Of a DNA stretch of 64,000 bases, positions 1-58,699 are shown in pieces. The position numbers were made by a program, and so were the translations under genes. Source of the DNA: Dendrobates tinctorius (taxonomy: Eukaryota); the NCBI RefSeq assembly GCF_039654945.1, contig NW_027361698.1, positions 19,654,001 to 19,718,000 on the forward strand, in the 5' to 3' direction. The notes beneath the pieces were generated by a model. The model was given only the letters and a program-made list of their open reading frames with translations. It did no database searches and had not been told where the DNA came from. Within the stretch, counting starts at the first letter, position 1, and the number at the start of each line of letters is the position of its first letter.

Positions 1-275
1 AAGGAGAGCTGGTGGATTGGTAAGCTATGATTTTTTTCCTAGAGTCTTCAGCATTTTTTTAAAACATGTCATGGAATGGAAAATACCCTTTAAAAAACAT
101 GCCTTGATTCCTAGATATCAGCGCCAGTCCTGGGCGTTGGCACCTCACTTCTGATTGTGCTGGCCTATCTGAGGACAACATAAAGTACTGACAGATAGTC
201 TCACAGTATCACTTACTGGGTTACTTTCTGGTTTTCATGAAGTTTTAGCCACAGATACGCTGGAGTACTCGTCAG

Positions 276-566
276 TAGTGATGAGCGAGTATACTCGTTG
301 CTCGGGTGTCCTCCGAGTATTTTGGCGTGCTCAGAGATTTAGTTTTCGTCGCCTTATCTGCATGATTTGTGACTGCTAGACAGCTTGAATACATGTGAGG
401 AATGCCTGTTTGTTAAGGAATTCCCACATATATTCAGCCTGTCTACAAATCGCAAATCATGCAGATAAGGGGAGGAAAACTAAATCTCCGAGCACGCCCA
501 AATACTCGGAGGACAGCCGAGCATGCTCGGGAAAACCCGAGCAACGAGTATACTCGCTCATCACTA
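276..566. mobile_element. Palindromic hAT-type MITE
   Basis: Perfect terminal inverted repeat TAGTGATGAGCGAGTATACTCGTTGCTCGGG / CCCGAGCAACGAGTATACTCGCTCATCACTA, and most of the interior is also self-complementary. The 8-bp flanks CTCGTCAG / CTTGCCAG (6/8) are a possible decayed TSD. Confidence 0.8.
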
Positions 567-574
567 CTTGCCAG

Positions 575-3500
575 CAGGGTTGTGGAGTCAAAGTCACGGA
601 GTCAGAGGCAGTGTCCATTTTGTGGTGGAGTCGGAGTTGGCATAAAATGGAAAGACTCTGACTCCTAAAATATATAATTGGGTACAGTATTACAATGCAG
701 GAGTTTTCATAATAATTGGGGAAAGTTATGAAATGTCCTATAAATGTTTGTTCTGTTCCTGATCTAAGAATCTTGGCTTTTAGTTGAGATGAATCTGTGC
801 TGCACTTTATGTACATGCTCAGTAGTGACCAGTGCTGTGGGGTCATAGTGGGGATGAATCTGTGCTGCACTTTATGTACATGCTCAGTAGTGACCAGTGC
901 TGTGGAGATGAATCTGTGCTGCACTTTATGTACATGCTTAGTAGTGACCAGTGCTGTGGAGATGAATCTGTGCTGCACTTTATGTACATGCTCAGTAGTG
1001 ACCAGTGCTGTGGGGTCATAGTGGGGATGAATCTGTGCTGCACTTTATGTACATGTTCAGTAGTGATCAGTGCTGTGGAGTCGTAGTGAAGAAGACTCTG
1101 TGCTGCACTTGATGTACATGCTCAGTAGTGAGGCAGTGCTGTGGGGTCGTAGTGGAGATGAATCTGTGCTGCACTTTATGTACATGCTCAGTAGTGAGGC
1201 AGTGCTGTGGGGTCATAGTGAAGATGACTGTGCTGCACTTTATGTACATGCTCAGTAGTGAGGCTGTGCTGTGGAGTCGTAGTGAAGATGACTCTGTGCT
1301 GCACTTTATCTACATGCTCAGTAGTGACCAGTGCTGTGGAGTCGTAGTGGAGATGAATCTGTGCTGCACTTTATGTACATGCTCAGTAGTGAGGCTGTGC
1401 TGTGGAGTCGTAGTGAAGATGACTCTGTGCTGCACTTTATGTACATGCTCAGTAGTGACCAGTGCTGTGGGGTCATAGTGAAGATGAATCTGTGCTGCAC
1501 TTTATGTACATGCTCAGTAGTGACCAGTGCTGTGGAGTCGTAGTGAAGATGAATCTGTGCTGCACTTTATGTACATGCTCAGTAGTGAGGCTGTGCTGTG
1601 GAGTCGTAGTGAAGATGACTCTGTGCTGCACTTTATGTACATGCTCAGTAGTGAGGCCGTGCTGTGGAGTCGTAGTGGAGATGAATCTGTGCTGCACTTT
1701 ATGTATATGCTCAGTAGTGAGGCAGTGCTGTGGAGTCATAGTGGAGATGAATCTGTGCTGCACTTTATGTACATGCTCAGTAGTGAGGAAGTGCTGTGGA
1801 ATCATAGTGGAGATGAATATGTGCTGCACTTTATGTACATGCTCAGTAGTGAGGCTGTGAGGTGGAGTCGTAGTGAAGATGACTCTGTGCTGCACTTTAT
1901 GTACATGCTCAGTAGTGACCAGTGCTGTGGAGTCGTAGTGGAGATGAATCTGTGCTGCACTTTATGTACATGCTCAGTAGTGAGGCAGTGCTGTGGAGTC
2001 GTAGTGAAGATGACTCTGTGCTACACTTTATGTACATGCTCAGTAGTGAGGCAGTGCTGTGGAGTCGTAGTGGAGATGAATCTGTGCTGCACTTTATGCA
2101 CATGCTCAGTAGTGAGGCAGTGCTGTGGAGTCGTAGTGAAGATGACTCTGTGCTGCACTTTATGTACATGCTCAGTAGTGACCAGTGCTGTGGAGTCGTA
2201 GTGAAGATGACTCTGTGCTGCACTTTTTGTACTTACTCAGTAGTGAGGCCGTGCTGTGGAGTCGTAGTGGAGATGAATCTGTGCTGCACTTTATGTACAT
2301 GCTCAGTAGTGAGGCCGTGCTGTGGAGTCGCAGTGGAGATGAATCTGTGCTACACTTTATGTACATGCTCAGTAGTGACCAGTGCTGTGGAGTCGTAGTG
2401 AAGATGACTCTGTGCTGCACTTGATGTACATGCTCAGTAGTGAGGCCGTGCTGTGGAGTCGTAGTGGAGATGAATCTGTGCTGCACTTTATGTACATGCT
2501 CAGTAGTGAGGCCGTGCTGTGGGGGCGTAGTGGAGATGAATCTGTGCTGCACTTTATGTACATGCTCAGTAGTGAGGCTGTGCTGTGGAGTCGTAGTAGA
2601 GATGAATCTGTGCTGCACTTTATGCACATGCTCAGTAGTGAGGCTGTGCTGTGGAGTCGTAGTAGAGATGAATCTGTGCTGCACTTTATGCACATACTCA
2701 GTAGTGAGGCTGTGCTGTGAAGTCGTAGCGGAGATGAATCTGTGCTGCACTTTATGTTCATGCTCAGTAGTGAGGCTGTGCTGTGGGGTTGTAGTGGAGA
2801 TGAATCTGTGCTGCACTTTATGTACATGCTCAGTAGTGAGGCAGTGCTGTGGAGTCGTAGTGGAGATGAATCTGTGCTGCACTTTATGTACATGCTCAGT
2901 AGTGAGGCAATGCTGTGGAGTCGTAATGGAGATGAATCTGTGCTGCACTTTATGTACATGCTCAGTAGTGAGGCAGTGCTGTGGAGTCGTAATGGAGATG
3001 AATCTGTGCTGCACTTTATGTACATGCTCAGTAGTGAGGAAGTGCTGTGGAGTCGTAGCGGAGATTAATCTGTGCTGCACTTTATGTACATGCTCAGTAG
3101 TGAGGCAGTGCTGTGGAGTCGTAATGGAGATGAATCTGTGCTGCACTTTATGTACATGCTCAGTAGTGAGGCAGTGATGTGGAGTCGTAGTGGAGATGAA
3201 TCTGTGCTGCACTTTATGTACATGCTCAGTAGTGACCAGTGCTGTGGAGTCGTAGTGAAGATGACTCTGTGCTGCACTTGATGTACATGCTCAGTAGTGA
3301 GGCCGTGCTGTGGAGTCGTAGTGGAGATGAATCTGTGCTGCACTTTATGTACATGCTCAGTAGTGAGGCCGTGCTGTGGGGGCGTAGTGGAGATGAATCT
3401 GTGCTGCACTTTATGTACATGCTCAGTAGTGAGGCTGTGCTGTGGAGTCGTAGTAGAGATGAATCTGTGCTGCACTTTATGCACATGCTCAGTAGTGAGG

Positions 3501-6500
3501 CTGTGCTGTGGAGTCGTAGTAGAGATGAATCTGTGCTGCACTTTATGCACATACTCAGTAGTGAGGCTGTGCTGTGAAGTCGTAGCGGAGATGAATCTGT
3601 GCTGCACTTTATGTTCATGCTCAGTAGTGAGGCTGTGCTGTGGGGTTGTAGTGGAGATGAATCTGTGCTGCACTTTATGTACATGCTCAGTAGTGAGGCA
3701 GTGCTGTGGAGTCGTAGTGGAGATGAATCTGTGCTGCACTTTATGTACATGCTCAGTAGTGAGGCAATGCTGTGGAGTCGTAATGGAGATGAATCTGTGC
3801 TGCACTTTATGTACATGCTCAGTAGTGAGGCAGTGCTGTGGAGTCGTAATGGAGATGAATCTGTGCTGCACTTTATGTACATGCTCAGTAGTGAGGAAGT
3901 GCTGTGGAGTCGTAGCGGAGATTAATCTGTGCTGCACTTTATGTACATGCTCAGTAGTGAGGCAGTGCTGTGGAGTCGTAATGGAGATGAATCTGTGCTG
4001 CACTTTATGTACATGCTCAGTAGTGAGGCAGTGATGTGGAGTCGTAGTGGAGATGAATCTGTGCTGCACTTTATGTACATGCTCAGTAGTGAGGCCGTGA
4101 TGTGGGGGCGTAGTGGAGATGAATCTGTGCTGCACTTTATGTACATGCTCAGTAGTGAGGCTGTGCTGTGGAGTCGTAGTAGAGATGAATCTGTGCTGCA
4201 CTTTATGCACATGCTCAGTAGTGAGGCTGTGCTGTGGAGTCGTAGTAGAGATGAATCTGTGCTGCACTTTATGCACATACTCAGTAGTGAGGCTGTGCTG
4301 TGGAGTCGTAGCGGAGATGAATCTGTGCTGCACTTTATGTACATGCTCAGTAGTGACAAGTGCTGTGGAGTCGTAGTGAAGATGACTCTGTGCTGCACTT
4401 TATGTACATGCTCAGTAGTGAGGCCGTGCTGTGGAGTCGTAGTGGAGATGAATCTGTGCTGCACTTTATGTACATGCTCAGTAGTGAGGAAGTGCTGTGG
4501 AGTCGTAGCGGAGATGAATCTGTGCTGCACTTTATGTACATGCTCAGTAGTGAGGCAGTGCTGTGGAGTCGTAATGGAGATGAATCTGTGCTGCACTTTA
4601 TGTACATGCTCAGTAGTGAGGCAGTGCTGTGGAGTCGTAGTGGAGATGAATCTGTGCTGCACTTGATGTACATGCTCAGTAGTGAGGCTGTGCTGTGGAG
4701 TCGTAGTGGAGATGAATCTGTGCTGCACTTTATGTACATGCTCAGTAGTGAGGCCGTGCTGTGGGGGTGTAGTGGAGATGAATCTGTGCTGCACTTTATG
4801 TACATGCTCAGTAGTGAGGCTGTGCTGTGGAGTCGTAGTAGAGATGAATCTGTGCTGCACTTTATGCACATGCTCAGTAGTGAGGCTGTGCTGTGGAGTC
4901 GTAGTAGAGATGAATCTGTGCTGCACTTTATGCACATACTCAGTAGTGAGGCTGTGCTGTGGAGTCGTAGCGGAGATGAATCTGTGCTGCGCTTTATGTA
5001 CATGCTCAGTAGTGAGGCTGTGCTGTGGGGTCGTAGTGGAGATGAATCTGCTGCACTTTATGTACATGCTCAGTAGTGAGGAAGTGCTGTGGAGTCGTAG
5101 CGGAGATGAATCTGTGCTGCACTTTATGTACATGCTCAGTAGTGAGGCTGTGCTGTGGGGTCGTAGTGGAGATGAATCTGTGCTGCACTTTATGTACATG
5201 CTCAGTAGTGAGGCAGTGCTGTGGGGTCATAGTGTAGATGAATCTGTGCTGCACTTTATGCACATGCTCAGCAGTGAGGCCGTGCTGTGGAGTCGTAGTG
5301 GAGATGAATCTGTGCTGCACTTTATGTACATGCTCAGTAGTGACCAGTGCTGTGGAGTCGTAGTGGAGATGAATCTGTGCTGCACTTTATGTACATGCTC
5401 AGTAGTGAGGCTGTGCTGTGGGGTCATAGTGAAGATGAATCTGTGCTGCACTTTATGTACATGCTCAGTAGTGACCAGTGCTGTGGAGTCGTAGTGAAGA
5501 TGAATCTGTGCTGCACTTTATGTACATGCTCAGTAGTGAGGCTGTGCTGTGGAGTCGTAGTGAAGATGACTCTGTGCTACACTTTATGTACATGCTCAGT
5601 AGTGAGGCCGTGCTGTGGAGTCGTAGTGGAGATGAATCTGTGCTGCACTTTATGTATATGCTCAGTAGTGAGGCAGTGCTGTGGAGTCGTAGTGGAGATG
5701 AATCTGTGCTGCACTTTATGTACATGCTCAGTAGTGAGGAAGTGGTGTGGAATCATAGTGGAGATGAAAATGTGCTGCACTTTATGTACATGCTCAGTAG
5801 TGAGGCTGTGCTGTGGAGTCGTAGTGAAAATGACTCTGTGCTGCACTTTATGTACATGCTCAGTAGTGACCAGTGCTGTGGAGTCATAGTGGAGATGAAT
5901 CTGTGCTGCACTTTTTGTACATGCTCAGTAGTGAGGCAGTGCTGTGGGGTCATAGTGAAGATGACTTTGTGCTGCACTTTATGTACATGCTCAGTAGTGA
6001 GGCTGTGCTGTGGAGTCGTAGTGAAGATGACTCTGTGCTGCACTTTATGTACATGCTCAGTAGTGACCAGTGCTGTGGAGTCGTAGTGGAGATGAATCTG
6101 TGCTGCACTTTATGTACATGCTCAGTAGTGAGGCCGTGCTGTGGGGTCGTAGTGGAGATGAATCTGTGCTGCACTTTATGTACATGCTCAGTAGTGAGGC
6201 AGTGCAGTGGAGTCGTAGTGGAGATGAATCTGTGCTGCACTTTATGTACATGCTCAGTAGTGACCAGTGCTGTGGAGTCGTAGTGAAGATGACTCTGTGC
6301 TGCACTTTATGTACATGCTCAGTAGTGAGGCCGTGCTGTGGAGTCGTAGTGGAGATGAATCTGTGCTGCACTTTATATACATGCTAAGTAGTGAGGCCGT
6401 GCTGTGGAGTCGTAGTGGAGATGGATCTGTGCTGCACTTTATGTACATGCTCAGTAGTGAGGCAGTGCTGTGGGGTCATAGTGAAGATGACTCTGTGCTG

Positions 6501-9500
6501 CACTTTATGTACATGCTCAGTAGTGAGGCCGTGCTGTGGAGTCATAGTGAAGATGACTCTGTGCTGCACTTTATGTACATGCTCAGTAGTGAGGCTGTGC
6601 TGTGGAGTCGTAGTGAAGATGACTCTGTGCTGCACTTTATGTACATACTCAGTAGTGAGGCTGTGCTGTGGAGTCGTAGTGGAGATGAATCTGTGCTGCA
6701 CTTTATGTACATGCTCAGTAGTGAGGAAGTGCTGTGGAGTCGTAGCGGAGATGAATCTGTGCTGCACTTTTTGTACATGCTCAGTAGTGAGGAAGTGCTG
6801 TGGAGTCGTAGCGGAGATTAATCTGTGCTGCACTTTATGTACATGCTCAGTAGTGAGGCAGTCCTGTGGAGTCGTAATGGAGATGAATCTGTGCTGCACT
6901 TTATGTACATGCTCAGTAGTGAGGCAGTGCTGTGGAGTCGTAGTGGAGATGAATCTGTGCTGCGCTTTATGTACATGCTCAGTAGTGACCAGTGCTGTGG
7001 AGTCGTAGTGAAGATGACTCTGTGCTGCACTTGATGTACATGCTCAGTAGTGAGGCCGTGCTGTGGAGTCGTAGTGGAGATGAATCTGTGCTGCACTTTA
7101 TGTACATGCTCAGTAGTGAGGCCGTGCTGTGGGGGTGTAGTGGAGATGAATCTGTGCTGCACTTTATGTACATGCTAAGTAGTGAGGCTGTGCTGTGGAG
7201 TCGTAGTAGAGATGAATCTGTGCTGCACTTTATGCACATGCTCAGTAGTGAGGCTGTGCTGTGGAGTCGTAGTAGAGATGAATCTGTGCTGCACTTTATG
7301 CACATACTCAGTAGTGAGGCTGTGCTGTGGAGTCGTAGCGGAGATGAATCTGTGCTGCAATTTATGTACATGCTCAGTAGTGAGGCTGTGCTGTGGGGTC
7401 GTAGTGGAGATGAATCTGTGCTGCACTTTATGTACATGCTCAGTAGTGAGGAAGTGCTGTGGGGTCATAGTGTTGATGAATCTGTGCTGCACTTTATGCA
7501 CATGCTCAGCAGTGAGGCAGTGCTGTGGCGTCGTAATGGAGATGAATCTGTACTGCACTTTATGTACATGCTCAGTAGTGAGGAAGTGCTGTGGAGTCGT
7601 AGCGGAGATGAATCTGTGCTGCACTTTATGTACATGCTCAGTAGTGAGGCTGTGCTGTGGAGTTGTAGTGGGGATCAATCTGTGCTGCACTTTATGTACA
7701 TGCTCAGTAGTGAGGCAGTGCTGTGGGGTCGTAGTGGAGATGAATCTGTGCTGCACTTTATGTACATGCTCAGTAGTGAGGCAGTGCTGTGGGGTCATAG
7801 TGAAGATGACTGTGCTGCACTTTATGTACATGCTCAGTAGTGAGGCTGTGCTGTGGAGTCGTAGTGAAGATGACTCTGTGCTGCACTTTATGTACATGCT
7901 CAGTAGTGACCAGTGCTGTGGAGTCATAGTGGAGATGAATCTCTGCTGCACTTTATGTACATGCTCAGTAGTGAGGCTGTGCTGTGGGGTCATAGTGAAG
8001 ATGAATCTGTGCTGCACTTTATGTACATGCTCAGTAGTGACCAGTGCTGTGGAGTCGTAGTGAAGATGAATCTGTGCTGCACTTTATGTACATGCTCAGT
8101 AGTGAGGCTGTGCTGTGGAGTCGTAGTGAAGATGACTCTGTGCTGCACTTTATGTACATGCTCAGTAGTGAGGCCGTGCTGTGGAGTCGTAGTGGAGATG
8201 AATCTGTGCTGCACTTTATGTATATGCTCAGTAGTGAGGCAGTGCTGTGGAGTCGTAGTGGAGATGAATCTGTGCTGCACTTTATGTACATGCTCAGTAG
8301 TGAGGAAGTGCTGTGGAATCATAGTGGAGATGAATATGTGCTGCACTTTATGTACATGCTCAGTAGTGAGGCTGTGCTGTGGAGTCGTAGTGAAAATGAC
8401 TCTGTGCTGCACTTTATGTACATGCTCAGTAGTGACCAGTGCTGTGGAGTCATAGTGGAGATGAATCTGTGCTGCACTTTTTGCACATGCTCAGTAGTGA
8501 GGCAGTGCTGTGGGGTCATAGTGAAGATGACTTTGTGCTGTACTTTATGTACATGCTCAGTAGTGAGGCTGTGCTGTGGAGTCGTAGTGAAGATGACTCT
8601 GTGCTGCACTTTATGTACATGCTCAGTAGTGACCAGTGCTGTGGAGTCGTAGTGGAGATGAATCTGTGCTGCACTTTATGTACATGCTCAGTAGTGAGGC
8701 AGTGCTGTGGAGTCGTAGTGAAGATGAATCTGTGCTGCACTTTATGTACATGCTCAGTAGTGAGGCCGTGCTGTGGGGTCGTAGTGGAGATGAATCTGTG
8801 CTGCACTTTATGTACATGCTCAGTAGTGAGGCAGTGCTGTGGAGTCGTAGTGAAGATGACTCTGTGCTGCACTTTATGTACATGCTCAGTAGTGACCAGT
8901 GCTGTGGAGTCGTAGTGGAGATGAATCTGTACTGCACTTTATGTACATGCTCAGTAGTGAGGCAGTGCTGTGGGGTCATAGTGAAGATGACTGTGCTGCA
9001 CTTTATGTACATGCTCAGTAGTGAGGCAGTGCTGTGGAGTCGTAGTGGAGATGAATCTGTGCTGCACTTTATGTACATGCTCAGTAGTGAGGCCGTGCTG
9101 TGGAGTCGCAGTGGAGATGAATCTGTGCTGCACTTTATGTACATGCTCAGTAGTGACCAGTGCTGTGGGGTCATAGTGGAGATGAATCTGTGCTGCACTT
9201 TATATACATGCTAAGTAGTGAGGCCGTGCTGTGGAGTCGTAGTGGAGATGGATCTGTGCTGCACTTTATGTACATGCTCAGTAGTGAGGCAGTGCTGTGG
9301 GGTCATAGTGAAGATGACTCTGTGCTGCACTTTATGTACATGCTCAGTAGTGAGGCTGTGCTGTGGAGTCGTAGTGAAGATGACTCTGTGCTGCACTTTA
9401 TGTACATGCTCAGTAGTGAGGCCGTGCTGTGGAGTCATAGTGGAGATGAATCTGTGCTGCACTTTATGTACATGCTCAGTAGTGAGGCAGTGCTGTGGAG

Positions 9501-12500
9501 TCGTAGTAGAGATGAATCTGTGCTGCACTTTATGTACATGCTCAGTAGTGACCAGTGCTGTGGAGTCGTAGTGAAGATGACTCTGTGCTGCACTTGATGT
9601 ACATGCTCAGTAGTGAGGCCGTGCTGTGGAGTCGTAGTGGAGATGAATCTGTGCTGCACTTTATGTACATGCTCAGTAGTGAGGCCGTGCTGTGGGGGCG
9701 TAGTGGAGATGAATCTGTGCTGCACTTTATGTACATGCTCAGTAGTGAGGCTGTGCTGTGGAGTCGTAGTAGAGATGAGTCTGTGCTGCACTTTATGCAC
9801 ATGCTCAGTAGTGAGGCTGTGCTGTGGAGTCGTAGTAGAGATGAATCTGTGCTGCACTTTATGCACATACTCAGTAGTGAGGCTGTGCTGTGGAGTCGTA
9901 GCGGAGATGAATCTGTGCTGCACGTTATGTACATGCTCAGTAGTGAGGCTGTGCTGTGGGGTTGTAGTGGAGATGAATCTGTGCTGCACTTTATGTACAT
10001 GCTCAGTAGTGAGGCAGTGCTGTGGAGTCGTAGTGGAGATGAATCTGTGCTGCACTTTATGTACATGCTCAGTAGTGAGGCTGTGCTGTGGAGTCGTAAT
10101 GGAGATGAATCTGTGCTGCACTTTTTGTACATGCTCAGTAGTGAGGAAGTTCTGTGGAGTCATAGTGGAGATGAATCTGTGCTGCACTTTATGTACATGC
10201 TCAGTAGTGAGGAAGTGCTGTGGAGTCGTAGCGGAGATGAATCTGTGCTGCACTTTATGTACATGCTCAGTAGTGAGGCCGTGTTGTGGGGGCGTAGTGG
10301 AGATGAATCTGTGCTGCACTTTATGTACATGCTCAGTAGTGAGGCTGTGCTGTGGAGTCGTAGTAGAGATGAATCTGTGCTGCACTTTATGCACATGCTC
10401 AGTAGTGAGGCTGTGCTGTGGAGTCGTAGTAGAGATGAATCTGTGCTGCACTTTATGCACATACTCAGTAGTGAGGCTGTGCTGTGGAGTCGTAGCGGAG
10501 ATGAATCTGTGCTGCACTTTATGTACATGCTCAGTAGTGAGGAAGTGCTGTGGGGTCATAGTGTTGATGAATCTGTGCTGCACTTTATGCACATGCTCAG
10601 CAGTGAGGCAGTGCTGTGGCGTCGTAATGGAGATGAATCTGTACTGCACTTTATGTACATGCTCAGTAGTGAGGAAGTGCTGTGGAGTCGTAGCGGAGAT
10701 GAATCTGTGCTGCACTTTATGTACATTCTCAGTAGTGAGGCTGTGCTGTGGAGTTGTAGTGGGGATCAATCTGTGCTGCACTTTATGTACATGCTCAGTA
10801 GTGAGGCAGTGCTGTGGGGTCGTAGTGGAGATGAATCTGTGCTGCACTTTATGTACATGCTCAGTAGTGAGGCAGTGCTGTGGGGTCATAGTGAAGATGA
10901 CTGTGCTGCACTTTATGTACATGCTCAGTAGTGAGGCTGTGCTGTGGAGTCGTAGTGAAGATGACTCTGTGCTGCACTTTATGTACATGCTCAGTAGTGA
11001 CCAGTGCTGTGGAGTCATAGTGGAGATGAATCTCTGCTGCACTTTATGTACATGCTCAGTAGTGAGGCTGTGCTGTGGAGTCCTAGTGAAGATGAATCTG
11101 TGCTGCACTTTATGTACATGCTCAGTAGTGACCAGTGCTGTGGAGTCGTAGTGAAGATGAATCTGTGCTGCACTTTATGTACATGCTCAGTAGTGAGGCT
11201 GTGCTGTGGAGTCGTAGTGAAGATGACTCTGTGCTGCACTTTATGTACATGCTCAGTAGTGAGGCCGTGCTGTGGAGTCGTAGTGGAGATGAATCTGTGC
11301 TGCACTTTATGTATATGCTCAGTAGTGAGGCAGTGCTGTGGAGTCGTAGTGGAGATGAATCTGTGCTGCACTTTATGTACATGCTCAGTAGTGAGGAAGT
11401 GCTGTGGAATCATAGTGGAGATGAATATGTGCTGCACTTTATGTACATGCTCAGTAGTGAGGCTGTGCTGTGGAGTCGTAGTGAAAATGACTCTGTGCTG
11501 CACTTTATGTACCTGCTCAGTAGTGACCAGTGCTGTGGAGTCATAGTGGAGATGAATCTGTGCTGCACTTTTTGCACATGCTCAGTAGTGAGGCAGTGCT
11601 GTGGGGTCATAGTGAAGATGACTTTGTGCTGCACTTTATGTACATGCTCAGTAGTGAGGCTGTGCTGTGGAGTCGTAGTGAAGATGACTCTGTGCTGCAC
11701 TTTATGTACATGCTCAGTAGTGACCAGTGCTGTGGAGTCGTAGTGGAGATGAATCTGTGCTGCACTTTATGTACATGCTCAGTAGTGAGGCCGTGCTGTG
11801 GGGTCGTAGTGGAGATGAATCTGTGCTGCACTTTATGTACATGCTCAGTAGTGAGGCAGTGCTGTGGAGTCGTAGTGAAGATGACTCTGTACTGCACTTT
11901 ATGTACATGCTCAGTAGTGACCAGTGCTGTGGAGTCGTAGTGGAGATGAATCTGTGCTGCACTTTATGTACATGCTCAGTAGTGAGGCAGTGCTGTGGGG
12001 TCATAGTGAAGATGACTGTGCTGCACTTTATGTACATGCTCAGTAGTGAGGCAGTGCTGTGGAGTCGTAGTGGAGATGAATCTGTGCTGCACTTTATGTA
12101 CATGCTCAGTAGTGAGGCAGTGCTGTGGAGTCGTAGTGGAGATGAATCTGTGCTGCACTTTATGTACATGCTCAGTAGTGACCAGTGCTGTGGAGTCGTA
12201 GTGAAGATGACTCTGTGCTGCACTTTATGTACATGCTCAGTAGTGAGGCCGTGCTGTGGAGTCGTAGTGGAGATGAATCTGTGCTGCACTTTATGTACAT
12301 GCTCAGTAGTGAGGCCGTGCTGTGGAGTCGCAGTGGAGATGAATCTGTGCTGCACTTTATGTACATGCTCAGTAGTGACCAGTGCTGTGGGGTCATAGTG
12401 GAGATGAATCTGTGCTGCACTTTATATACATGCTAAGTAGTGAGGCCGTGCTGTGGAGTCGTAGTGGAGATGGATCTGTGCTGCACTTTATGTACATGCT

Positions 12501-15500
12501 CAGTAGTGAGGCAGTGCTGTGGGGTCATAGTGAAGATGACTCTGTGCTGCACTTTATGTACATGCTCAGTAGTGAGGCTGTGCTGTGGAGTCGTAGTGAA
12601 GATGAATCTGTGCTGCACTTTATGTACATGCTCAGTAGTGAGGCCGTGCTGTGGAGTCATAGTGGAGATGAATCTGTGCTGCACTTTATGTACATGCTCA
12701 GTAGTGAGGCAGTGCTGTGGAGTCGTAGTAGAGATGAATCTGTGCTGCACTTTATGTACATGCTCAGTAGTGACCAGTGCTGTGGAGTCGTAGTGAAGAT
12801 GACTCTGTGCTGCACTTGATGTACATGCTCAGTAGTGAGGCCGTGCTGTGGAGTCGTAGTGGAGATGAATCTGTGCTGCACTTTATGTACATGCTCAGTA
12901 GTGAGGCCGTGCTGTGGGGGCGCAGTGGAGATGAATCTGTGCTGCACTTTATGTACATGCTCAGTAGTGAGGCTGTGCTGTGGAGTCGTAGTAGAGATGA
13001 GTCTGTGCTGCACTTTATGCACATGCTCAGTAGTGAGGCTGTGCTGTGGAGTCGTAGTAGAGATGAATCTGTGCTGCACTTTATGCACATACTCAGTAGT
13101 GAGGCTGTGCTGTGGAGTCGTAGCGGAGATGAATCTGTGCTGCACGTTATGTACATGCTCAGTAGTGAGGCTGTGCTGTGGGGTTGTAGTGGAGATGAAT
13201 CTGTGCTGCACTTTATGTACATGCTCAGTAGTGAGGCAGTGCTGTGGAGTCGTAGTGGAGATGAATCTGTGCTGCACTTTATTACATGCTCAGTAGTGAG
13301 GCTGTGCTGTGGAGTCGTAATGGAGATGAATCTGTGCTGCACTTTTTGTACATGCTCAGTAGTGAGGAAGTTCTGTGGAGTCATAGTGGAGATGAATCTG
13401 TGCTGCACTTTATGTACATGCTCAGTAGTGAGGAAGTGCTGTGGAGTCGTAGCGGAGATGAATCTGTGCTGCACTTTATGTACATGCTCAGTAGTGAGGC
13501 CGTGCTGTGGGGGCGTAGTGGAGATGAATCTGTGCTGCACTTTATGTACATGCTCAGTAGTGAGGCTGCGCTGTGGAGTCGTAGTAGAGATGAATCTGTG
13601 CTGCACTTTATGCACATGCTCAGTAGTGAGGCTGTGCTGTGGAGTCGTAGTAGAGATGAATCTGTGCTGCACTTTATGCACATACTCAGTAGTGAGGCTG
13701 TGCTGTGGAGTCGTAGCGGAGATGAATCTGTGCTGCACTTTATGTACATGCTCAGTAGTGAGGAAGTGCTGTGGAGTCGTAGCGGAGATTAATCTGCGCT
13801 GCACTTTATGTACATGCTCAGTAGTGAGGCAGTGCTGTGGAGTCGTAATGGAGATGAATCTGTGCTGCACTTTATGTACATGCTCAGTAGTGAGGCAGTG
13901 CTGTGGAGTCGTAGTGGAGATGAATCTGTGCTGCACTTTATGTACATGCTCAGTAGTGAGGCCGTGCTGTGGGGTCGTAGTGGAGATGAATCTGTGCTGC
14001 ACTTTATGTACATGCTCAGTAGTGAGGCAGTGCTGTGGAGTCGTAGTGAAGATGACTCTGTGCTGCACTTTATGTACATGCTCAGTAGTGACCAGTGCTG
14101 TGGAGTCGTAGTGGAGATGAATCTGTGCTGCACTTTATGTACATGCTCAGTAGTGACCAGTGCTGTGGAGTCGTAGTGAAGATGACCCTGTGCTGCACTT
14201 TATGTACATGCTCAGTAGTGAGGCCGTGCTGTGGAGTCGTAGTGGAGATGAATCTGTGCTGCACTTTATGTACATGCTCAGTAGTGAGGCCGTGCTGTGG
14301 AGTCGCAGTGGAGATGAATCTGTGCTGCACTTTATGTACATGCTCAGTAGTGACCAGTGCTGTGGGGTCATAGTGGAGATGAATCTGTGCTGCACTTTAT
14401 ATACATGCTAAGTAGTGAGGCCGTGCTGTGGAGTCGTAGTGGAGATGGATCTGTGCTGCACTTTATGTACATGCTCAGTAGTGAGGCAGTGCTGTGGGGT
14501 CATAGTGAAGATGACTCTGTGCTGCACTTTATGTACATGCTCAGTAGTGAGGCTGTGCTGTGGAGTCGTAGTGAAGATGACTCTGTGCTGCACTTTATGT
14601 ACATGCTCAGTAGTGAGGCCGTGCTGTGGAGTCATAGTGGAGATGAATCTGTGCTGCACTTTATGTACATGCTCAGTAGTGAGGCAGTGCTGTGGAGTCG
14701 TAGTAGAGATGAATCTTTGCTGCACTTTATGTACATGCTCAGTAGTGACCAGTGCTGTGGAGTCGTAGTGAAGATGACTCTGTGCTGCACTTGATGTACA
14801 TGCTCAGTAGTGAGGCCGTGCTGTGGAGTCGTAGTGGAGATGAATCTGTGCTGCACTTTATGTACATGCTCAGTAGTGAGGCCGTGCTGTGGGGGCATAG
14901 TGGAGATGAATCTGTGCTGCACTTTATGTACATGCTCAGTAGTGAGGCTGTGCTGTGGAGTCGTAGTAGAGATGAGTCTGTGCTGCACTTTATGCACATG
15001 CTCAGTAGTGAGGCTGTGCTGTGGAGTCGTAGTAGAGATGAATCTGTGCTGCACTTTATACACATACTCAGTAGTGAGGCTGTGCTGTGGAGTCGTAGCG
15101 GAGATGAATCTGTGCTGCACTTTATGTACATGCTCAGTAGTGAGGCTGTGCTGTGGGGTTGTAGTGGAGATGAATCTGTGCTGCACTTTATGTACATGCT
15201 CAGTAGTGAGGCAGTGCTGTGGAGTCGTAGTGGAGATGAATCTGTGCTGCACTTTATGTACATGCTCAGTAGTGAGGCTGTGCTGTGGAGTCGTAATGGA
15301 GATGAATCTGTGCTGCACTTTTTGTACATGCTCAGTAGTGAGGAAGTGCTGTGGAGTCATAGTGGAGATGAATCTGTGCTGCACTTTATGTACATGCTCA
15401 GTAGTGAGGAAGTGCTGTGGAGTCGTAGCGGAGATGAATCTGTGCTGCACTTTATGTACATGCTCAGTAGTGAGGCCGTGCTGTGGGGGCGTAGTGGAGA

Positions 15501-18066
15501 TGAATCTGTGCTGCACTTTATGTACATGCTCAGTAGTGAGGCTGTGCTGTGGAGTCGTAGTAGAGATGAATTTGTGCTGCACTTTATGCACATGCTCAGT
15601 AGTGAGGCTGTGCTGTGGAGTCGTAGTAGAGATGAATCTGTGCTGCACTTTATGCACATACTCAGTAGTGAGGCTGTGCTGTGGGGTTGTAGTGGAGATG
15701 AATCTGTGCTGCACTTTATGTACATGCTCAGTAGTGAGGCAGTGCTGTGGAGTCGTAGTGGAGATGAATCTGTGCTGCACTTTATGTACATGCTCAGTAG
15801 TGAGGCTGTGCTGTGGAGTCGTAATGGAGATGAATCTGTGCTGCACTTTTTGTACATACTCAGTAGTGAGGAAGTGCTGTGGAGTCATAGTGGAGATGAA
15901 TCTGTGCTGCACTTTATGTACATGCTCAGTAGTGAGGAAGTGCTGTGGAGTCGTAGCGGAGATTAATCTTTGCTGCACTTTATGTACATGCTCAGTAGTG
16001 AGGCAGTGCTGTGGAGTCGTAATGGAGATGAATCTGTGCTGCACTTTATGTACATGCTCAGTAGTGAGGCAGTGCTGTGGAGTCGTAGTGGAGATGAATC
16101 TGTGCTGCACTTTATGTACATGCTCAGTAGTGACCAGTGCTGTGGAATCGTAGTGAAGATGACTCTGTGCTGCACTTTATGTACAAGCTCAGTAGTGAGG
16201 CCATGCTGTGGGGGCGTAGTGGAGATGAATCTGTGCTGCACTTTATGTACATGCTCAGTAGTGAGGCCATGCTGTGGAATCGTAGTGGAGATGAATCTGT
16301 GCTGCACTTTATGTACATGCTCAGTAGTGAGGCTGTGCTGTGGAGTCGTAGTAGAGATGAATCTGTGCTGCACTTTATGCACATGCTCAGTAGTGAGGCT
16401 GTGCTGTGGAGTCGTAGTAGAGATGAATCTGTGCTGCACTTTATGCACATACTCAGTAGTGAGGCTGTGCTGTGGAGTCGTAGCGGAGATGAATCTGTGC
16501 TGCACTTTATGTACATGCTCAGTAGTGAGGCTGTGCTGTGGGGTCGTAGTGGAGATGAATCTGTGCTGCACTTTATGTACATGCTCAGTAGTGAGGAAGT
16601 GCTGTGGAGTCGTAGCGGAGATGAATCTGTGCTGCACTTTTTGTACATGCTCAGTAGTGAGGAAGTGCTGTGGAGTCATAGTGGAGATGAATCTGTGCTG
16701 CACTTTATGTACATGCTCAGTAGTGAGGAAGTGCTGTGGAGTCGTAGCGGAGATTAATCTGTGCTGCACTTTATGTACATGCTCAGTAGTGAGGCAGTGC
16801 TGTGGAGTCGTAATGGAGATGAATCTGTGCTGCACTTGATGTACATGCTCAGTAGTGAGGCCGTGCTGTGGAGTCGTAGTGGAGATGAATCTGTGCTGCA
16901 CTTTATGTACATGCTCAGTAGTGAGGCCGTGTTGTGGGGGCGTAGTGGAGATGAATCTGTGCTGCACTTTATGTACATGCTCAGTAGTGAGGCTGTGCTG
17001 TGGAGTCGTAGTAGATATGAATCTGTGCTGCACTTTATGCACATGCTCAATAGTGAGGCTGTGCTGTGGAGTCGTAGTAGAGATGAATCTGTGCTGCACT
17101 TTATGCACATACTCAGTAGTGAGGCTGTGCTGTGGAGTCGTAGCGGAGATGAATCTGTGCTGCACTTTATGTACATGCTCAGTAGTGAGGCTGTGCTGTG
17201 GGGTCGTAGTGGAGATGAATCTGTGCTGCACTTTATGTACATGCTCAGTAGTGAGGAAGTGCTGTGGGGTCATAGTGTAGATGAATCTGTGCTGCACTTT
17301 ATGCACATGCTCAGTAGTGAGGCAGTGCTGTGGCGTCGTAATGGAGATGAATCTGTACTGCACTTTATGTACATGCTCAGTAGTGAGGAAGTGCTGTGGA
17401 GTCGTAGCGGAGATGAATCTGTGCTGCACTTTATGTACATGCTCAGTAGTGAGGCAGTGCTGTGGAGTCGTAGTGGAGATGAATCTGTGCTGCACTTTAT
17501 GTACATGCTCAGTAGTGACCAGTGCTGTGGAGTCGTAGTGGAGATGAATCTATGCTGCACTTTATGTACATGCTCAGTAGTGAGGCCGTGCTGTGGAGTG
17601 GTAGTGGAGATGAATCTGTGCTGCACTTTATGTATATGCTCAGTAGTGAGGCAGTGCTGTGGAGTCGTAGTGGAGATGTATCTGTGCTGCACTTTATGTA
17701 CATGCTCAGTAGTGAGGCCGTGCTGTGGAGTTGTAGTGGAGATGAATCTGTGCTGCACTTTATGTACATGCTCAGTAGTGAGGCCGTGCTGTGGAGTGGT
17801 AGTGGAGATGAATCTGTACTGCACTTTATGTACATGCTCAGTAGTGAGGAAGTGCTGTGGAGTCGTAGTGGAGATGAATCTGTGCTGCACTTTATGTACA
17901 TGCTCAGTAGTGAGGCAGTGCTGTGGAGTCGTAGTGGAGATGAATCTGTGCTGCACTTTATGTACATGCTCAGTAGTGGGGCAGTGCTGTGGAGTAAAAG
18001 TCGGGAGTCTGGGAAATTGAGTCAGAGTTGGATTTGGTGGTTTGGCTTACCGACTCCACAGCCCTG
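575..18066. mobile_element. Non-autonomous hAT-like element enclosing the 66-bp array
   Basis: Left end CAGGGTTGTGGAGTC (575) and right end GACTCCACAGCCCTG (18052-18066) form a 14/15 TIR. Clustered GGAGTC/GACTCC subterminal motifs occur at both ends. The flanks CTTGCCAG / CTCCCAGA only loosely resemble a TSD. Confidence 0.7.
781..17995. repeat. 66-bp tandem (satellite) array, ~260 units, with 65-bp and 54-bp variants
   Basis: Consensus GTGCTGTGGAGTCGTAGTGGAGATGAATCTGTGCTGCACTTTATGTACATGCTCAGTAGTGAGGCA. The 65-bp variant ends GACCA. Shortened 54-bp units occur near 900-1010. Confidence 0.98.
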
Positions 18067-18075
18067 CTCCCAGAG

Positions 18076-18166
18076 TTTAGATTGTGAGTCCCAATGGGGT
18101 GGGTGACAAAAAAGTCTGTAAAGAGCTGTGAAATAAATGGAGCTATACAAGTAACTAGAATAAATA
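18076..18166 (+). mobile_element. SINE/L2-type 3' tail fragment
   Basis: TTTAGATTGTGAGTCCC...CTGTAAAGAGCTGTGAAATAAATGGAGCTATA resembles the SINE tail at 50525-50620. Confidence 0.55.
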
Positions 18167-18424
18167 TTTTCATGAGTGACCGGCTCCCCTGCCTACCCAC
18201 AGCTGACTGACAGATTCCCCTTATGCAAAGTATAGAGAGAATGCTGTCTACCAGTTATTGGAGGGTCACTGCCGCCCCGTGCTGCACCTAATAACGTGTG
18301 ATACATGATAATACATGCTTTTGTTACCAGGACGTAATGTATTAATACAGATTATCAGCAAATTTGTGTTGTTTGCTTGTGTTTCCAGAACATGATTATG
18401 ATTATTTGTATATTCAGTCTGTTA

Positions 18425-19091
18425 GGCCGGGGTCACACTGGCGAGGAATACGGGAGAGTGAGAGGCGCAAAAAGCACGCATTAGACACGGACCAATGATT
18501 CTCTTTGGGGTCACTCGCACCAGCCGTATATTTCTCCTCAGTATCCTACGCTCCGTGCCACTCGCAGCATGCTGCGATTGTCAGCGTACTACGGCCGTAG
18601 TACGCCAATGCAAGTCTATGGGTGCGCAAAAAATACGGATTACACACGGAGCACACATGTGACTTGCGAGAAATACGCACCAGGTGTCTTTTAGCAAAGC
18701 CGGCAATTCAGTGCGCGATACAGTAAACTCACACTGACAATTTTAATAAAGAAATGAAAGAATAGATATAGACACATAGAATACATATATATATATATAT
18801 ATATAAATAAATATATATATATATATATATGTATTCTATGTGTCTATATCTATTCTTTCATTTCTTTATTAAAACTGTCATAGGGCTCCATTATATGTCC
18901 ATTTTGCAAGCCTGCGAGAAAATCTCACCATACGGATGCCATACGGATTACATACGGATGCTGACATGCGCAAAATACGTGACCACACCTTGATTACGGA
19001 TGAAATACGGAGCACTGTTTAGGGGTCTGTCATCCGTATTACGCATGTAAAATACTGACTGTATTTTGCGCAGGTTAGTGTGACTCCAGCT
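18425..19091. mobile_element. PIF/Harbinger-type MITE with an internal hairpin around a (TA)n tract
   Basis: TIR GGCCGGGGTCACACT / AGTGTGACTCCAGCT with TTA on both sides. Near-perfect internal inverted repeat at ~18736-18880 centred on (TA)n. Confidence 0.8.
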
Positions 19092-21348: not shown

Positions 21349-21892
21349 AGTAGGAGCTGGGAACCCCACCAGTCCCCTGAATCCATGGGGCTGGGGCATC
21401 AGTAATGACAGGAGCCTGAGGTGTGCCAAATCCCCTTGTGTCCTGGATTAGGCCAGGTAATCCGGAACTAGCAGCGCTTGGACGCAGCACATATTCACGC
21501 TTCCAAAGCACTGCCGTCAGAGGCGTAGCTAGGGTTTTGGTTCAGGGGGGCGAAACTTCTGAGTGGGCCCCTAACCAGAGAACCTCAACAGATGATAATC
21601 TATATCTAAAAAGACCAACATTGATATTACCGCCATGTGGTCAGTGGTAGATCTCAGTCCTACAGAACATATAAGAGATTACAGCAGAGTTACAGATAAT
21701 GACTTACCGCTGACGTTCTTTCTGATGGAATCGTTCACTTTTCACGTCTTTTCCATCTGGCCCAGACCGACATGACAACTTCTTCCAGACAGGACTCGGC
21801 TGCAGAGAATACAACAACAACACATTTCACTTCTCACATTTTCAGCACTGTCACCAATTGGACCATTCTCATCCTGCACAAACTGCTCATCC

Positions 21893-24800
21893 TGCTGATA
21901 CCCCAATACTGAGCCACTGCTGCCATATCTGTCCTTATTACTGCACCTGATACCCCAATACTGAGCCGCTGCTGCCATATCTGTCCTTATTACTGCACCT
22001 GATACCCCAATACTGAGCCGCTGCTGCCATATCTGTCCTTATTACTGCACCTGATACCCCAATACTGAGCCGCTGCTGCCATATCTGTCCTTATTACTGC
22101 ACCTGATACCCCAATACTGAGCCGCTGCTGCCATATCTGTCCTTATTACTGCACCTGATACCCCAATACTGAGCCGCTGCTGCCATATCTGTCCTTATTA
22201 CTGCACCTGATACCCCAATACTGAGCCGCTGCTGCCATATCTGTCCTTATTACTGCACCTGATACCCCAATACTGAGCCGCTGCTGCCGTATGTGTCCCT
22301 ATTACTGCACCTGATACCCCAATACTGAACCGCTGCTGCCGTATGTGTCCCTATTACTGCACCTGATACCCCAATACTGAACCGCTGCTGCCATATCTGT
22401 CCTTATTACTGCACCTGATACCCCAATACTGAGCCGCTGCTGCCATATCTGTCCTTATTACTGCACCTGATACCCCAATACTGAGCCGCTGCTGCCATAT
22501 CTGTCCTTATTACTGCACCTGATACCCCAATACTGAACCGCTGCTGCCGTATGTGTCCCTATTACTGCACCTGATACCCCAATACTGAACCGCTGCTGCC
22601 ATATCTGTCCTTATTACTGCACCTGATACCCCAATACTGAGCCACTGCTGCCATATCTGTCCTTATTACTGCACCTGATACCCCAATACTGAGCCGCTGC
22701 TGCCATATCTGTCCTTATTACTGCACCTGATACCCCAATACTGAGCCACTGCTGCCATATCTGTCCTTATTACTGCACCTGATACCCCAATACTGAGCTG
22801 CTGCTGCCATATCTGTCCTTATTACTGCACCTGATACCCCAATACTGAGCCGCTGCTGCCATACCTGTCCTTATTACTTCACCTGATACCCCAATACTGA
22901 ACCGCTGCTGCCATATCTGTCCTTATTACTGCACCTGATACCCCAATACTGAGCCGCTGCTGCCATATCTGTCCTTATTACTGCACCTGATACCCCAATA
23001 CTGAACCGCTGCTGCCGTATGTGTCCCTATTACTGCACCTGATACCCCAATACTGAACCACTGCTGCCATATCTGTCCTTATTACTGCACCTGATACCCC
23101 AATACTGAGCCACTGCTGCCATATCTGTCCTTATTACTGCACCTGATACCCCAATACTGAGCCGCTGCTGCCATATCTGTCCTTATTACTGCACCTGATA
23201 CCCCAATACTGAGCCGCTGCTGCCATACCTGTCCTTATTACTGCACCTGATACCCCAATACTGAACCGCTGCTGCCATATCTGTCCTTATTACTGCACCT
23301 GATACCCCAATACTGAGCCGCTGCTGCCATATCTGTCCTTATTACTGCACCTGATACCCCAATACTGAGCCGCTGCTGCCATACCTGTCCTTATTACTGC
23401 ACCTGATACCCCAATACTGAACCGCTGCTGCCATATCTGTCCTTATTACTGCACCTGATACCCCAATACTGAGCCACTGCTGCCATATCTGTCCTTATTA
23501 CTGCACCTGATACCCCAATACTGAGCCGCTGCTGCCGTATGTGTCCCTATTACTGCACCTGATACCCCAATACTGAGCCGCTGCTGCCGTATGTGTCCCT
23601 ATTACTGCACCTGATACCCCAATACTGAGCCACTGCTGCCATATCTGTCCTTATTACTGCACCTGATACCCCAATACTGAGCCACTGCTGCCGTATGTGT
23701 CCCTATTACTGCACCTGATACCCCAATACTGAGCCGCTGCTGCCGTATGTGTACCTATAACTGCACCTGATACCCCAATACTGAGCCACTGCTGCCATAT
23801 CTGTCCTTATTACTGCACCTGATACCCCAATACTGAGCCACTGCTGCCGTATGTGTCCCTATTACTGCACCTGATACCCCAATACTGAACCGCTGCTGCC
23901 ATATCTGTCCTTATTACTTCACCTGATACCCCAATACTGAGCCGCTGCTGCCATACCTGTCCTTATTACTGCACCTGATACCCCAATACTGAACCGCTGC
24001 TGCCATATCTGTCCTTATTACTGCACCTGACACCCCAATACTGAGCCGCTGCTGCCATATCTGTCCTTATTACTGCACCTGGTACCCCAATACTGAGCCG
24101 CTGCTGCCGTATGTGTCCCTATTACTGCACCTAATACCCCAATACTGAGCCGCTGCTGCCGTATGTGTCCCTATTACTGCACCTGATACCCCAATACTGA
24201 GCCACTGCTGCCATATCTGTCCTTATTACTGCACCTGATACCCCAATACTGAGCCGCTGCTGCCGTATGTGTCCCTATTACTGCACCTGATACCCCAATA
24301 CTGAGCCACTGCTGCCATATCTGTCCTTATTACTGCACCTGATACCCCAATACTGAGCCACTGCTGCCATATCTGTCCTTATTACTGCACCTGATACCCC
24401 AATACTGAGCCGCTGCTGCCATATCTGTCCTTATTACTGCACCTGATACCCCAATACTGAGCCGCTGCTGCCATATCTGTCCTTATTACTGCACCTGATA
24501 CCCCAATACTGAGCCGCTGCTGCCATATCTGTCCTTATTACTGCACCTGATACCCCAATACTGAGCCGCTGCTGCCATATCTGTCCTTATTACTGCACCT
24601 GATACCCCAATACTGAGCCGCTGCTGCCATATCTGTCCTTATTACTGCACCTGATACCCCAATACTGAGCCACTGCTGCCGTATGTGTCCCTATTACTGC
24701 ACCTGATACCCCAATACTGAGCCACTGCTGCCATATCTGTCCTTATTACTGCACCTGATAGCCCAATACTGAGCCGCTGCTGCCGTATGTGTCCCTATTA

Positions 24801-30210: not shown

Positions 30211-30538
30211 GCTGTGTGGTTCTGTGTGACCTCTACATTTTAAAGCAACCCTCTACAATATAGTGATGCTGGGTGCAAGTGCCCTAGAAAACAGTGCCCA
30301 CATTTTGTCCCCTAGAATGTAATAGTGCCCTGTGTGCCCCTTTGACAGTCACAGTAACCCAAGTTCCCCTATAATAAGTGCTCACTTTACATTTAGTAAT
30401 GTCCCAAGTCTCCCCCGTGTACAGCTCCTCTATACACAGTATGATGCTCTCTTACACAGTATAATGCCCCCACACTGTATGATGGCCCCGTCACTATAAT
30501 CACTGTATGATGGCCCCCTAGATAGCATCCATATAGCA

Positions 30539-31018
30539 CAGTGGTCCCCAACCTATCTGACCTTGAGAGCCACATTCACCTTAGACAGAGGGTCGCGAGC
30601 CACATTCAGCTCCCACCCCCTTCAAAGTAGTGTCACTCAATACCCCCATTACAGGTATAATGATAACCAATGCTTTTCCACATAAATCATTCCAAAGCAT
30701 CACACTGAGATACAGGGGTTCCCACAATACCCCCATTCAGTATTCTCCCAACACACTGTCACATCCAGCTTTGAGCATCTCCTCTAACATGTAGTACCAT
30801 CCTCCAGCGTACCATACCTAAAACATCTCTAAACCTCTAAGACCCAGATCTGCTCTTCTGTGCAGGGCTACTCACGTAAATCACTATTTTGTGATGTACT
30901 CTTCATACCTCTTTGCTAGACCTGGAGCTAATGCACCATGCTGGCAGACAGTCGCAAGCCACAATTCATGGGACCACGAGTAACATGTGGCTCCCGAGCT
31001 ACAAGTTGGGGACCCCTG
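30539..31018. mobile_element. hAT (Charlie-like) MITE nested in the large hAT element
   Basis: TIR CAGTGGTCCCCAAC / GTTGGGGACCCCTG. TSD ATATAGCA / ATATAGTA (7/8). Confidence 0.85.
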
Positions 31019-31049
31019 ATATAGTATAATACACCAGATAGTCCTCAAT

Positions 31050-34000: not shown

Positions 34001-34358
34001 ATGGCTGCCTCTGTACCCCTATAGACAGCCTCTGTACCCCTATGGCAGCCTCTGTACCCCTATGGCAGCCTCTGTACCCCCATAGACAGTCTCTGTATCC
34101 CCATAGACAGCCTCTGTAACCCCATAGGCAGCCTCTGTACCCCATAGGCAGCCTCTGTAACCCCATAGGCAGCCTCTGTAACCCCATAGGCTGCCACTGT
34201 ACCCCTATAGGCAGCCTCTGTACCCCTATAGGCAGCCTCTGTACCCCTATGGCAGCCTCTGTACCCTCATAGACAGCCTCTGTACCCCCATAGACAGCCT
34301 CTGTAACCCCATAGGCAGCCTCTGCACCCCTATAGGCAGCCTCTGTATTATAATGCAC
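31050..34358. repeat. Minisatellite with 31/32-bp units grading into 21/20-bp units
   Basis: CCCCATAGGCAGCCTCTGTA+TTATAATGCAC units run to ~31730. Units then lose TTATAATGCA to give CCCCATAGGCAGCCTCTGTAA. Interrupted at ~32226-32475. Confidence 0.95.
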
Positions 34359-58691: not shown

Positions 58692-58699
58692 TTTTATGT

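What the first reader, a model, noticed from the sequence alone, without database searches (positions are those of the whole stretch)
575..18066. 17-kb satellite inside a hAT element, with each unit carrying a copy of the element's own TIR
Seen: the array is bracketed by TIRs CAGGGTTGTGGAGTC / GACTCCACAGCCCTG. Every 66-bp unit contains (CA)GTGCTGTGGAGTC(G), a near-copy of the left TIR in the same orientation. The last unit (17982, CAGTGCTGTGGAGTAAAAGTCGGGAGTC) closely mimics the true left end (CAGGGTTGTGGAGTCAAAGTCACGGAGTC). Known: hAT transposases bind TIRs and subterminal repeats, and MITE-derived tandem repeats are described in Xenopus. Inference: this is an array of ~260 alternative left ends facing one right end. 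It could transpose at any length from ~85 bp to 17.5 kb and so seed satellite blocks, or act as a transposase decoy.
Basis: partly seen in the sequence, partly recalled or inferred. Interest (0 to 1): 0.72.

Follow-up and report, generated by a model that had tools for sequence, protein, structure and literature searches.

The report
Satellite array between transposon-like ends
A 17-kb run of about 262 copies of a 66-base unit lies between two short transposon-type ends in a frog genome, and each unit carries a decaying copy of the end sequence; this is a known way for small jumping genes to breed satellite DNA, and nothing here shows the copies act as spare ends.

Summary
Window 782-17995 is one head-to-tail array of about 262 units of 66 bp. 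It is bounded by non-satellite pieces (575-781 and 17996-18066) whose outer 15 bases are inverted copies of each other (14/15). Each unit holds a 16-base motif that matches the complement of the right terminus at 15/16, always in left-end orientation. The last unit runs in register into a 29-base look-alike of the left end (24/29).

There is no target-site duplication, so hAT membership and "one element" rest on the ends alone. The end-like motif is among the least conserved parts of the unit. Only 100 of 261 units keep the terminal CAG, and 72 keep both CAG and GGAGTC. Blocks of 13 to 79 units are repeated at 99.5-100% identity, so the array grew largely in place.

My reading is a non-autonomous hAT-like element whose interior became a satellite, after a 66-bp duplication that spanned an internal end copy. 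Xstir/Xmix and Tetris are known precedents. The scan has already noted an 18-unit array with a 66-base unit elsewhere in this genome.

The "alternative ends / decoy" idea remains untested and unsupported.

The parts
575..589 (+). left terminal inverted repeat (15 nt, begins CAGGG)
   Evidence: 14/15 complementary to 18052-18066
575..781 (+). left end piece, 207 bp and not satellite. GGAGTC occurs at 584, 598 and 627. A 10-nt inverted pair lies at 598-607 and 656-665.
   Evidence: No significant likeness to the unit apart from the short motif. Motif positions, inverted pair.
782..17995 (+). array of about 262 units of 66 bp. Each unit is about 50 nt of unrelated sequence plus a 16-nt terminus-like motif.
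   Evidence: The array starts just after the motif and ends inside it.
830..1459 (+). left-edge units. They are more diverged (mean 0.911 to consensus against about 0.955), include two 54-bp units, and the first seven (830-1263) start with CAG.
2353..4092 (+). 13-unit block duplicated in tandem (2353-3235 = 3210-4092, 883 bp, 100%)
8991..15684 (+). multi-kb block duplications: 8991-10487 = 14188-15684 (1497 bp, 99.5%); 8991-10060 = 12213-13282 (99.7%); 12118-13282 = 14093-15257 (99.4%). Another pair, 7406-8700 = 10497-11791 (99.6%), starts before this span.
17982..18066 (+). 85-bp piece with both kinds of end: a left-end look-alike (17982-18009, 24/29 to 575-603) facing the right terminus
17996..18051 (+). 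right unique piece, not unit-like
18052..18066 (-). right terminal inverted repeat
567..574 (.). left 8-bp flank. It does not match 18067-18074, so there is no target-site duplication.

Best explanation
This is a non-autonomous, hAT-like cut-and-paste element, or the remnant of one, whose interior has turned into a satellite. A 66-bp segment was duplicated by slippage or faulty repair. That segment was made of about 50 nt of internal sequence plus the first 16 or so nt of an internal copy of the element's own left terminus, the copy that now starts at 17982. Unequal exchange then amplified the segment, in blocks of 13 to 79 units, to 17.2 kb at this locus. The terminus-like motif in each unit is a passenger of that founding duplication. 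It is decaying, not maintained, and no function is needed to explain it. Shown: the anatomy, the register of the array with the internal end copy, the decay of the motif and the block duplications. Inferred: the founding event, the hAT assignment, and that both ends once moved together.
For: The array has sharp limits, and its flanking pieces are not decayed units. The outer 15 nt are inverted at 14/15 (1% of shuffles). The unit motif matches the terminus at 15/16, and the likeness stops exactly at the terminal CAG; the other 50 nt of the unit resemble neither end. The array begins right after the motif and ends inside it, continuing into the left-end look-alike. This is what a tandem duplication across that junction predicts. 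The motif columns are the most variable, including CpG decay at the CG of the motif (G to A in 44 units, C to T in 11), while columns 30-64 are 98.5% uniform. Edge units are more diverged, and the first seven at the left edge keep CAG. Long blocks are repeated at 99.4-100% against 93% overall. No protein relative was found for the array reading frames and there is no hAT transposase in the window. Published precedents exist for satellites derived from MITE or TIR sequence (PMC9659126 table 1; PMC12628747 section 4). Earlier scan notes, not checked here, report an 18-unit array with a 66-base unit inside a hAT MITE elsewhere in this genome.
Against: There is no target-site duplication of any length. 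No second copy of either end lies in the 64 kb, and no genome-wide data could be obtained, so mobility of the family and the pairing of these two ends are unproven. The TIR evidence alone is modest (p about 0.01, post hoc). The founding-duplication story leaves 3 nt unaccounted for at the last junction. The internal left-end copy has no target-site duplication of its own either.
Confidence: 0.58

Rival explanations
1. This is not one element. The left end at 575 and the 85-bp piece at 17982-18066 come from two insertions of the same family, with the satellite grown between them. Alternatively, the copy is a chimera made by recombination between the arrays of two array-bearing copies, which would separate the original target-site duplications.
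For: There is no target-site duplication. The 85-bp piece has both a left-type and a right-type end and could stand alone. The homology between unit and terminus stops exactly at the terminal base, as at a true insertion junction. Long homogeneous arrays are good substrates for ectopic exchange (inference).
Against: The 85-bp piece has no target-site duplication of its own. No partner right end for 575 and no further end occurs in the window.
Confidence: 0.22
2. One reading: the units are working alternative left ends (or decoys) for the cognate transposase. The right end could then move with any number of units and seed new satellite blocks, or the array could soak up transposase.
For: All motif copies point the way a left end should, and the last one continues into a 29-nt left-end look-alike. 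GGAGTC, the candidate subterminal site, is present in 188 of 261 units. Use of alternative ends is established for Ac/Ds in maize (textbook knowledge). Helitron arrays with many 5' ends and one 3' end are described (PMC12628747 section 4).
Against: The motif is among the least conserved parts of the unit. The terminal CAG is lost in 161 of 261 units, and interior variants lacking it were spread by block duplication. Array length is accounted for by local duplication. There is no evidence of any copy that starts at a unit. Units lack the rest of the left subterminal region.
Confidence: 0.07
3. No transposon is involved. This is an ordinary satellite whose borders happen to carry stray copies of its most distinctive 15-17-nt motif, one of them inverted.
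For: All three 'ends' are simply copies of one motif that the array holds 262 times. The right 'TIR' is 16/17 to an inverted unit motif. There is no target-site duplication. The TIR match alone has p about 0.01.
Against: The likeness of both outer copies to the unit stops exactly at CAG and does not extend into neighbouring unit sequence. The left end and the 17982 piece share a further 14 or so nt and more that the unit lacks (z 2.9). The left end carries three GGAGTC repeats, as in a subterminal region. The motif begins with the hAT-type CAGGG.
Confidence: 0.08

Closest known systems
Xstir satellite and its Xmix MITE (Xenopus laevis; Hikosaka and Kawahara 2004, as summarised in PMC12628747 section 4 and PMC9659126 table 1)
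   Same: An amphibian MITE whose own sequence (listed as TIR-derived) gave a tandem repeat. The MITE alone, the array alone and a composite of MITE plus array all exist.
   Different: A different element family and unit. The Xstir forms were shown across many copies and species, whereas here there is one locus. The stem-loop model proposed for Xstir is not needed here.
miDNA4 (Xenopus tropicalis Tc1/mariner MITE with an internal satellite; Scalvenzi and Pollet 2014, via PMC12628747 and PMC12054243)
   Same: A short non-coding element with terminal inverted repeats and an internal tandem repeat whose copy number varies. It is proposed as a route to satellite arrays and genome growth in frogs.
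   Different: It belongs to the Tc1/mariner superfamily. Its repeat is thought to have been captured and is not derived from the terminus. Its arrays are far shorter (elements of 300-600 bp).
Tetris foldback element and the TIR-220 satellite (Drosophila virilis; PMC4079207)
   Same: The satellite monomers come from the terminal repeat region of a DNA transposon.
   Different: It is a foldback element with long, internally repetitive TIRs on both sides. Here the array has one orientation and lies between short TIRs.
Tandem arrays of truncated Helitrons with many 5' ends and a single 3' end (Xiong et al. 2016, via PMC12628747 section 4)
   Same: The architecture is the same: many copies of one end facing a single copy of the other end.
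   Different: Those arrays are made by rolling-circle replication that skips the terminator. The element here has inverted termini and no Helitron features.
FEDoR (Rana temporaria; PMC12054243)
   Same: A non-coding frog element with internal tandem repeats and a forward plus reverse repeat pair at each side. Here the left piece has an inverted GGAGTC pair, and the right piece has a left-type and a right-type end.
   Different: FEDoR is 3.5 kb, has target-site duplications in 43 copies, and has several different internal repeats. No sequence relation was tested.
Alternative transposition of Ac/Ds ends in maize
   Different: Those ends are complete, with about 200 bp of subterminal sites. The units here carry only about 16-25 nt of end-like sequence.

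Membership tests
hAT superfamily (non-autonomous member) | 8-bp target-site duplication | tested here: not met
   The flanks are CTTGCCAG and CTCCCAGA. The best score at any offset of +-4 is 5/8, and shorter duplications are absent too (sequence).
hAT superfamily (non-autonomous member) | Short terminal inverted repeats beginning YARNG | tested here: met
   Both termini read CAGGG... and are 15 nt long, 14/15 complementary. The consensus rule itself is from general knowledge.
hAT superfamily (non-autonomous member) | Short subterminal repeats near the ends | tested here: met
   GGAGTC lies at 584, 598 and 627 on the left. Only one direct copy (18004) lies on the right, so the right side is atypical.
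hAT superfamily (non-autonomous member) | An autonomous partner encoding a hAT transposase with the same ends | not testable with these tools
   None in the window. The genome could not be searched.
MITE carrying an internal tandem repeat (Xstir/miDNA4 kind) | Short, non-coding, with inverted termini once the array is set aside | tested here: met
   The ends total 278 bp (207 + 71). The open frames in the array are repeat artefacts with no relatives.
MITE carrying an internal tandem repeat (Xstir/miDNA4 kind) | Many dispersed copies with the same ends and varying numbers of units | not testable with these tools
   No other copy in the window. Metagenome scans found nothing related. An earlier unchecked note reports an 18-unit array with a 66-base unit.
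Satellite DNA | Long head-to-tail array with homogenised units and higher-order blocks | tested here: met
   17.2 kb at 93% matches, with blocks of 13-79 units at 99.4-100%.
Satellite DNA | High genomic abundance, with arrays at several loci | not testable with these tools
   No access to the assembly or to reads.

The most novel reading that the evidence does not exclude
The array is a working set of nested left ends. The family's transposase pairs the single right end with any intact unit, so pieces from 85 bp to 17 kb are cut out and reinserted. This would be a transposase-driven way of seeding the same satellite at new loci with ready-made arrays of different length.
Probability: 0.07. Interest if true: 0.7.

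Novelty: new member of a known kind. Interest (0 to 1): 0.3.

Why it matters
It is a clean, large example of a satellite whose monomer includes the terminus of the transposon that houses it. The junction is still readable: the array is in register with an internal end copy, which points to a single junction-spanning duplication as the founding event. That is useful for annotating repeats in giant frog genomes, where hAT elements with internal arrays appear to be common. It does not by itself show a new mechanism. If the units were shown to act as ends, it would give a testable route for dispersing satellites.

Tried and rejected
I did not try further.

2. Reaching other copies through spurious ORFs of the array. 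The word search with the frame spanning the array and right end found nothing.

3. Metagenome scans. The unit core gave 0 hits. The terminus pattern gave 2 hits, both unrelated GC-rich or other contigs and therefore chance.

4. Findings search by sequence was blank, which means nothing.

5. A literal search of papers for the terminal 15-mers gave 0 papers.

6. Whether the whole unit is a diverged copy of the 85-bp piece or of the left end. Rejected: z = -1.0 and -0.1.

7. Whether the left or right unique pieces are decayed units. Rejected.

8. Whether the neighbouring repeat-filled element (21518-34806) also builds its units from its own terminus. Only a shared 7-mer was found (p 0.06-0.15), not significant, so this serves as a negative control.

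9. Rfam found no family in the window.

10. megablast self-comparison gave no useful high-identity rows and was replaced by a diagonal scan.
Full report
**What is there**

Reading the two borders and running Tandem Repeats Finder show one uninterrupted head-to-tail array. TRF reports 956-17995, period 66, 258.9 copies and 93% matches. The first, more irregular units start at 782. Anchoring on the conserved motif finds 262 copies between 832 and 17984, spaced 66 (215 times), 65 (38), 64 (6) or 54 bp (2).

The array is bounded by a 207-bp piece on the left (575-781) and a 71-bp piece on the right (17996-18066). Neither piece is a decayed unit. The outermost 15 bases of the two pieces are inverted copies of each other at 14/15. 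Between flanks of this size, an inverted match that good arises in 1% of shuffles. The termini alone are therefore suggestive and not overwhelming. No other copy of either piece lies in the 64 kb.

**The end-like motif in the unit**

The unit consensus, rotated to start at the motif, begins with a 16-mer. It matches the left terminus at 13/15 and the complement of the right terminus at 15/16, or 16/17 with one more base. Against shuffled units this gives p = 0.006 and 0 of 1000. The likeness stops exactly at the terminal CAG. The remaining 50 nt of the unit resemble neither end (z = -1.0 and -0.1).

All copies point the same way as the left end. GGAGTC occurs 192 times on the + strand within 575-18066, and its complement occurs only at 660 and in the right terminus.

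The last unit merges after 14 nt into sequence that continues the left-end pattern (24 of 29 columns). The left end and this piece share a little more beyond the terminus (z = 2.9, p = 0.013).

As a control, the other repeat-filled element of the window (21518-34806) shares only a 7-mer with its own units, which is not significant.

**What does not fit a simple, intact hAT insertion**

The 8-bp flanks are CTTGCCAG and CTCCCAGA. No offset of +-4 gives better than 5/8, and no shorter duplication exists. hAT membership therefore rests on three things: the CAGGG start and length of the termini, the GGAGTC subterminal repeats on the left, and the abundance of hAT elements in this genome. That abundance is given as 3.9% of the dyeing poison frog assembly in PMC11152451. 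I took the identity of the genome from earlier scan notes and did not test it. The window holds no hAT transposase.

**How the array evolved**

Column by column, the end-like motif is among the least conserved stretches of the unit.
- Mean major-base frequency is 0.923 for columns 1-16, against 0.966 for the rest and 0.985 for columns 30-64.
- The motif window ranks third lowest of the 66 possible 16-column windows.
- The second base of the terminal CA is A in 51%, T in 30% and C in 19% of units.
- The CG inside the motif shows CpG-type decay (44 units G to A, 11 units C to T).
- Only 100 of 261 units start with CAG, 188 keep GGAGTC, 72 keep both, and 68 keep the full 15-mer.

The left block of ten units is the most diverged (0.911 to the consensus) and contains two 54-bp units. 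Its first seven units start with CAG. CAG is thus probably ancestral, and the variants lacking it arose inside the array and were spread.

That spread is visible as block duplications:

| Blocks | Length | Identity | Offset |
|---|---|---|---|
| 2353-3235 = 3210-4092 | 883 bp | 100% | 13 units |
| 7406-8700 = 10497-11791 | 1295 bp | 99.6% | 47 units |
| 8991-10487 = 14188-15684 | 1497 bp | 99.5% | 79 units |

Further pairs lie at offsets of 30 to 86 units. Overall unit identity, by contrast, is 93%. Much of the present 17.2 kb therefore arose at this locus by unequal exchange or replication errors.

**Most likely origin**

The array begins immediately after the motif position and ends inside the motif, continuing into the left-end look-alike. 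This is the pattern expected if a 66-bp segment was duplicated once and then amplified. That segment would have consisted of about 50 nt of internal sequence plus the first 16 or so nt of an internal left-end copy. Three bases at the last junction are not explained by this simple account.

I cannot resolve how the internal end copy came to lie 85 bp from the right terminus. It may have been a nested tiny element, or an internal duplication. The piece has no target-site duplication of its own.

The missing duplication for the whole structure could mean age, two separate insertions, or recombination between the arrays of two copies. I give the two-element or chimera rival about 0.2.

Nothing found here shows that units act as ends or decoys. 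The decay of the motif, the loss of the terminal CAG in most units, and the sufficiency of local duplication all speak against maintained function. They do not exclude occasional use of the intact units.

- A protein-word search through the array's open frames found nothing.
- Two metagenome scans gave only chance hits.

Earlier notes of this scan, unchecked by me, report an 18-unit array with a 66-base unit inside an old hAT MITE on another piece of this genome. They also report several other hAT elements with internal arrays. If that array belongs to the same family, it would fit a family whose array length varies between copies, and it means the scan has seen this kind of thing before.

**Comparison with what is known**

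Satellites born from MITEs or from transposon termini are documented.
- Xstir from the Xmix MITE of Xenopus laevis is listed as TIR-derived. It exists as the MITE, the array and the composite.
- miDNA4 of X. tropicalis carries a variable internal repeat.
- Tetris and its TIR-220 satellite occur in Drosophila virilis.
- Helitron arrays have many 5' ends and one 3' end.
- The repeat-filled FEDoR element occurs in Rana temporaria.

The sources are PMC9659126 table 1, PMC12628747 section 4 and PMC12054243. The present case is a large and unusually legible member of that kind, not a new kind.

**Verdict**

I rate this a new member of a known kind, with moderate to low interest.

Noticed in passing
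window 274-568: A 295-bp palindromic MITE of another family. It has 34-nt perfect terminal inverted repeats and inner arms of 99 nt at 88%. It ends only 6 bp before the left terminus at 575, so it may have disturbed the original left flank.
   Followed up: partly
window 21518-34806: A second repeat-filled element with hAT-type ends. It holds a 52-bp array (21895-30211, 160 copies) and 21-, 31- and 63-bp arrays (31054-34347). Its units share only a 7-mer with its own terminus, which is not significant.
   Followed up: partly
window 41840-42862 (-): An intact-looking 340-aa Tc1/Sleeping-Beauty-type transposase ORF (HTH_SB, HTH_Tnp_Tc3_2, DDE_3).
   Followed up: no
window 58343-60227: A Ty3/gypsy-type pol fragment (RNase H plus integrase, 58683-60227 +), preceded by a 41-bp tandem repeat of 8.5 copies (58343-58690).
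   Followed up: no
window 53039-53608 (-): A 189-aa ORF with a GDSL-like lipase/esterase domain (E = 2.8e-9). It may be the esterase-type ORF1 of a LINE, and the neighbouring ORFs had no Pfam match.
   Followed up: no
window 18735-18880: An AT-rich, near-perfect palindrome with 70-nt arms at 99% and a 6-nt loop, about 0.7 kb right of the element.
   Followed up: no
window 18067-18170: The right flank of the element looks like the 3' part of an old SINE-like frog repeat. This is recognised from memory only, and no tool test was made.
   Followed up: no
window 575-18066, both strands: Because 66 is a multiple of 3, the array is open in several frames, with 86 ORFs of 100-557 aa. These are artefacts that a gene caller could mistake for repeat proteins.
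   Followed up: yes
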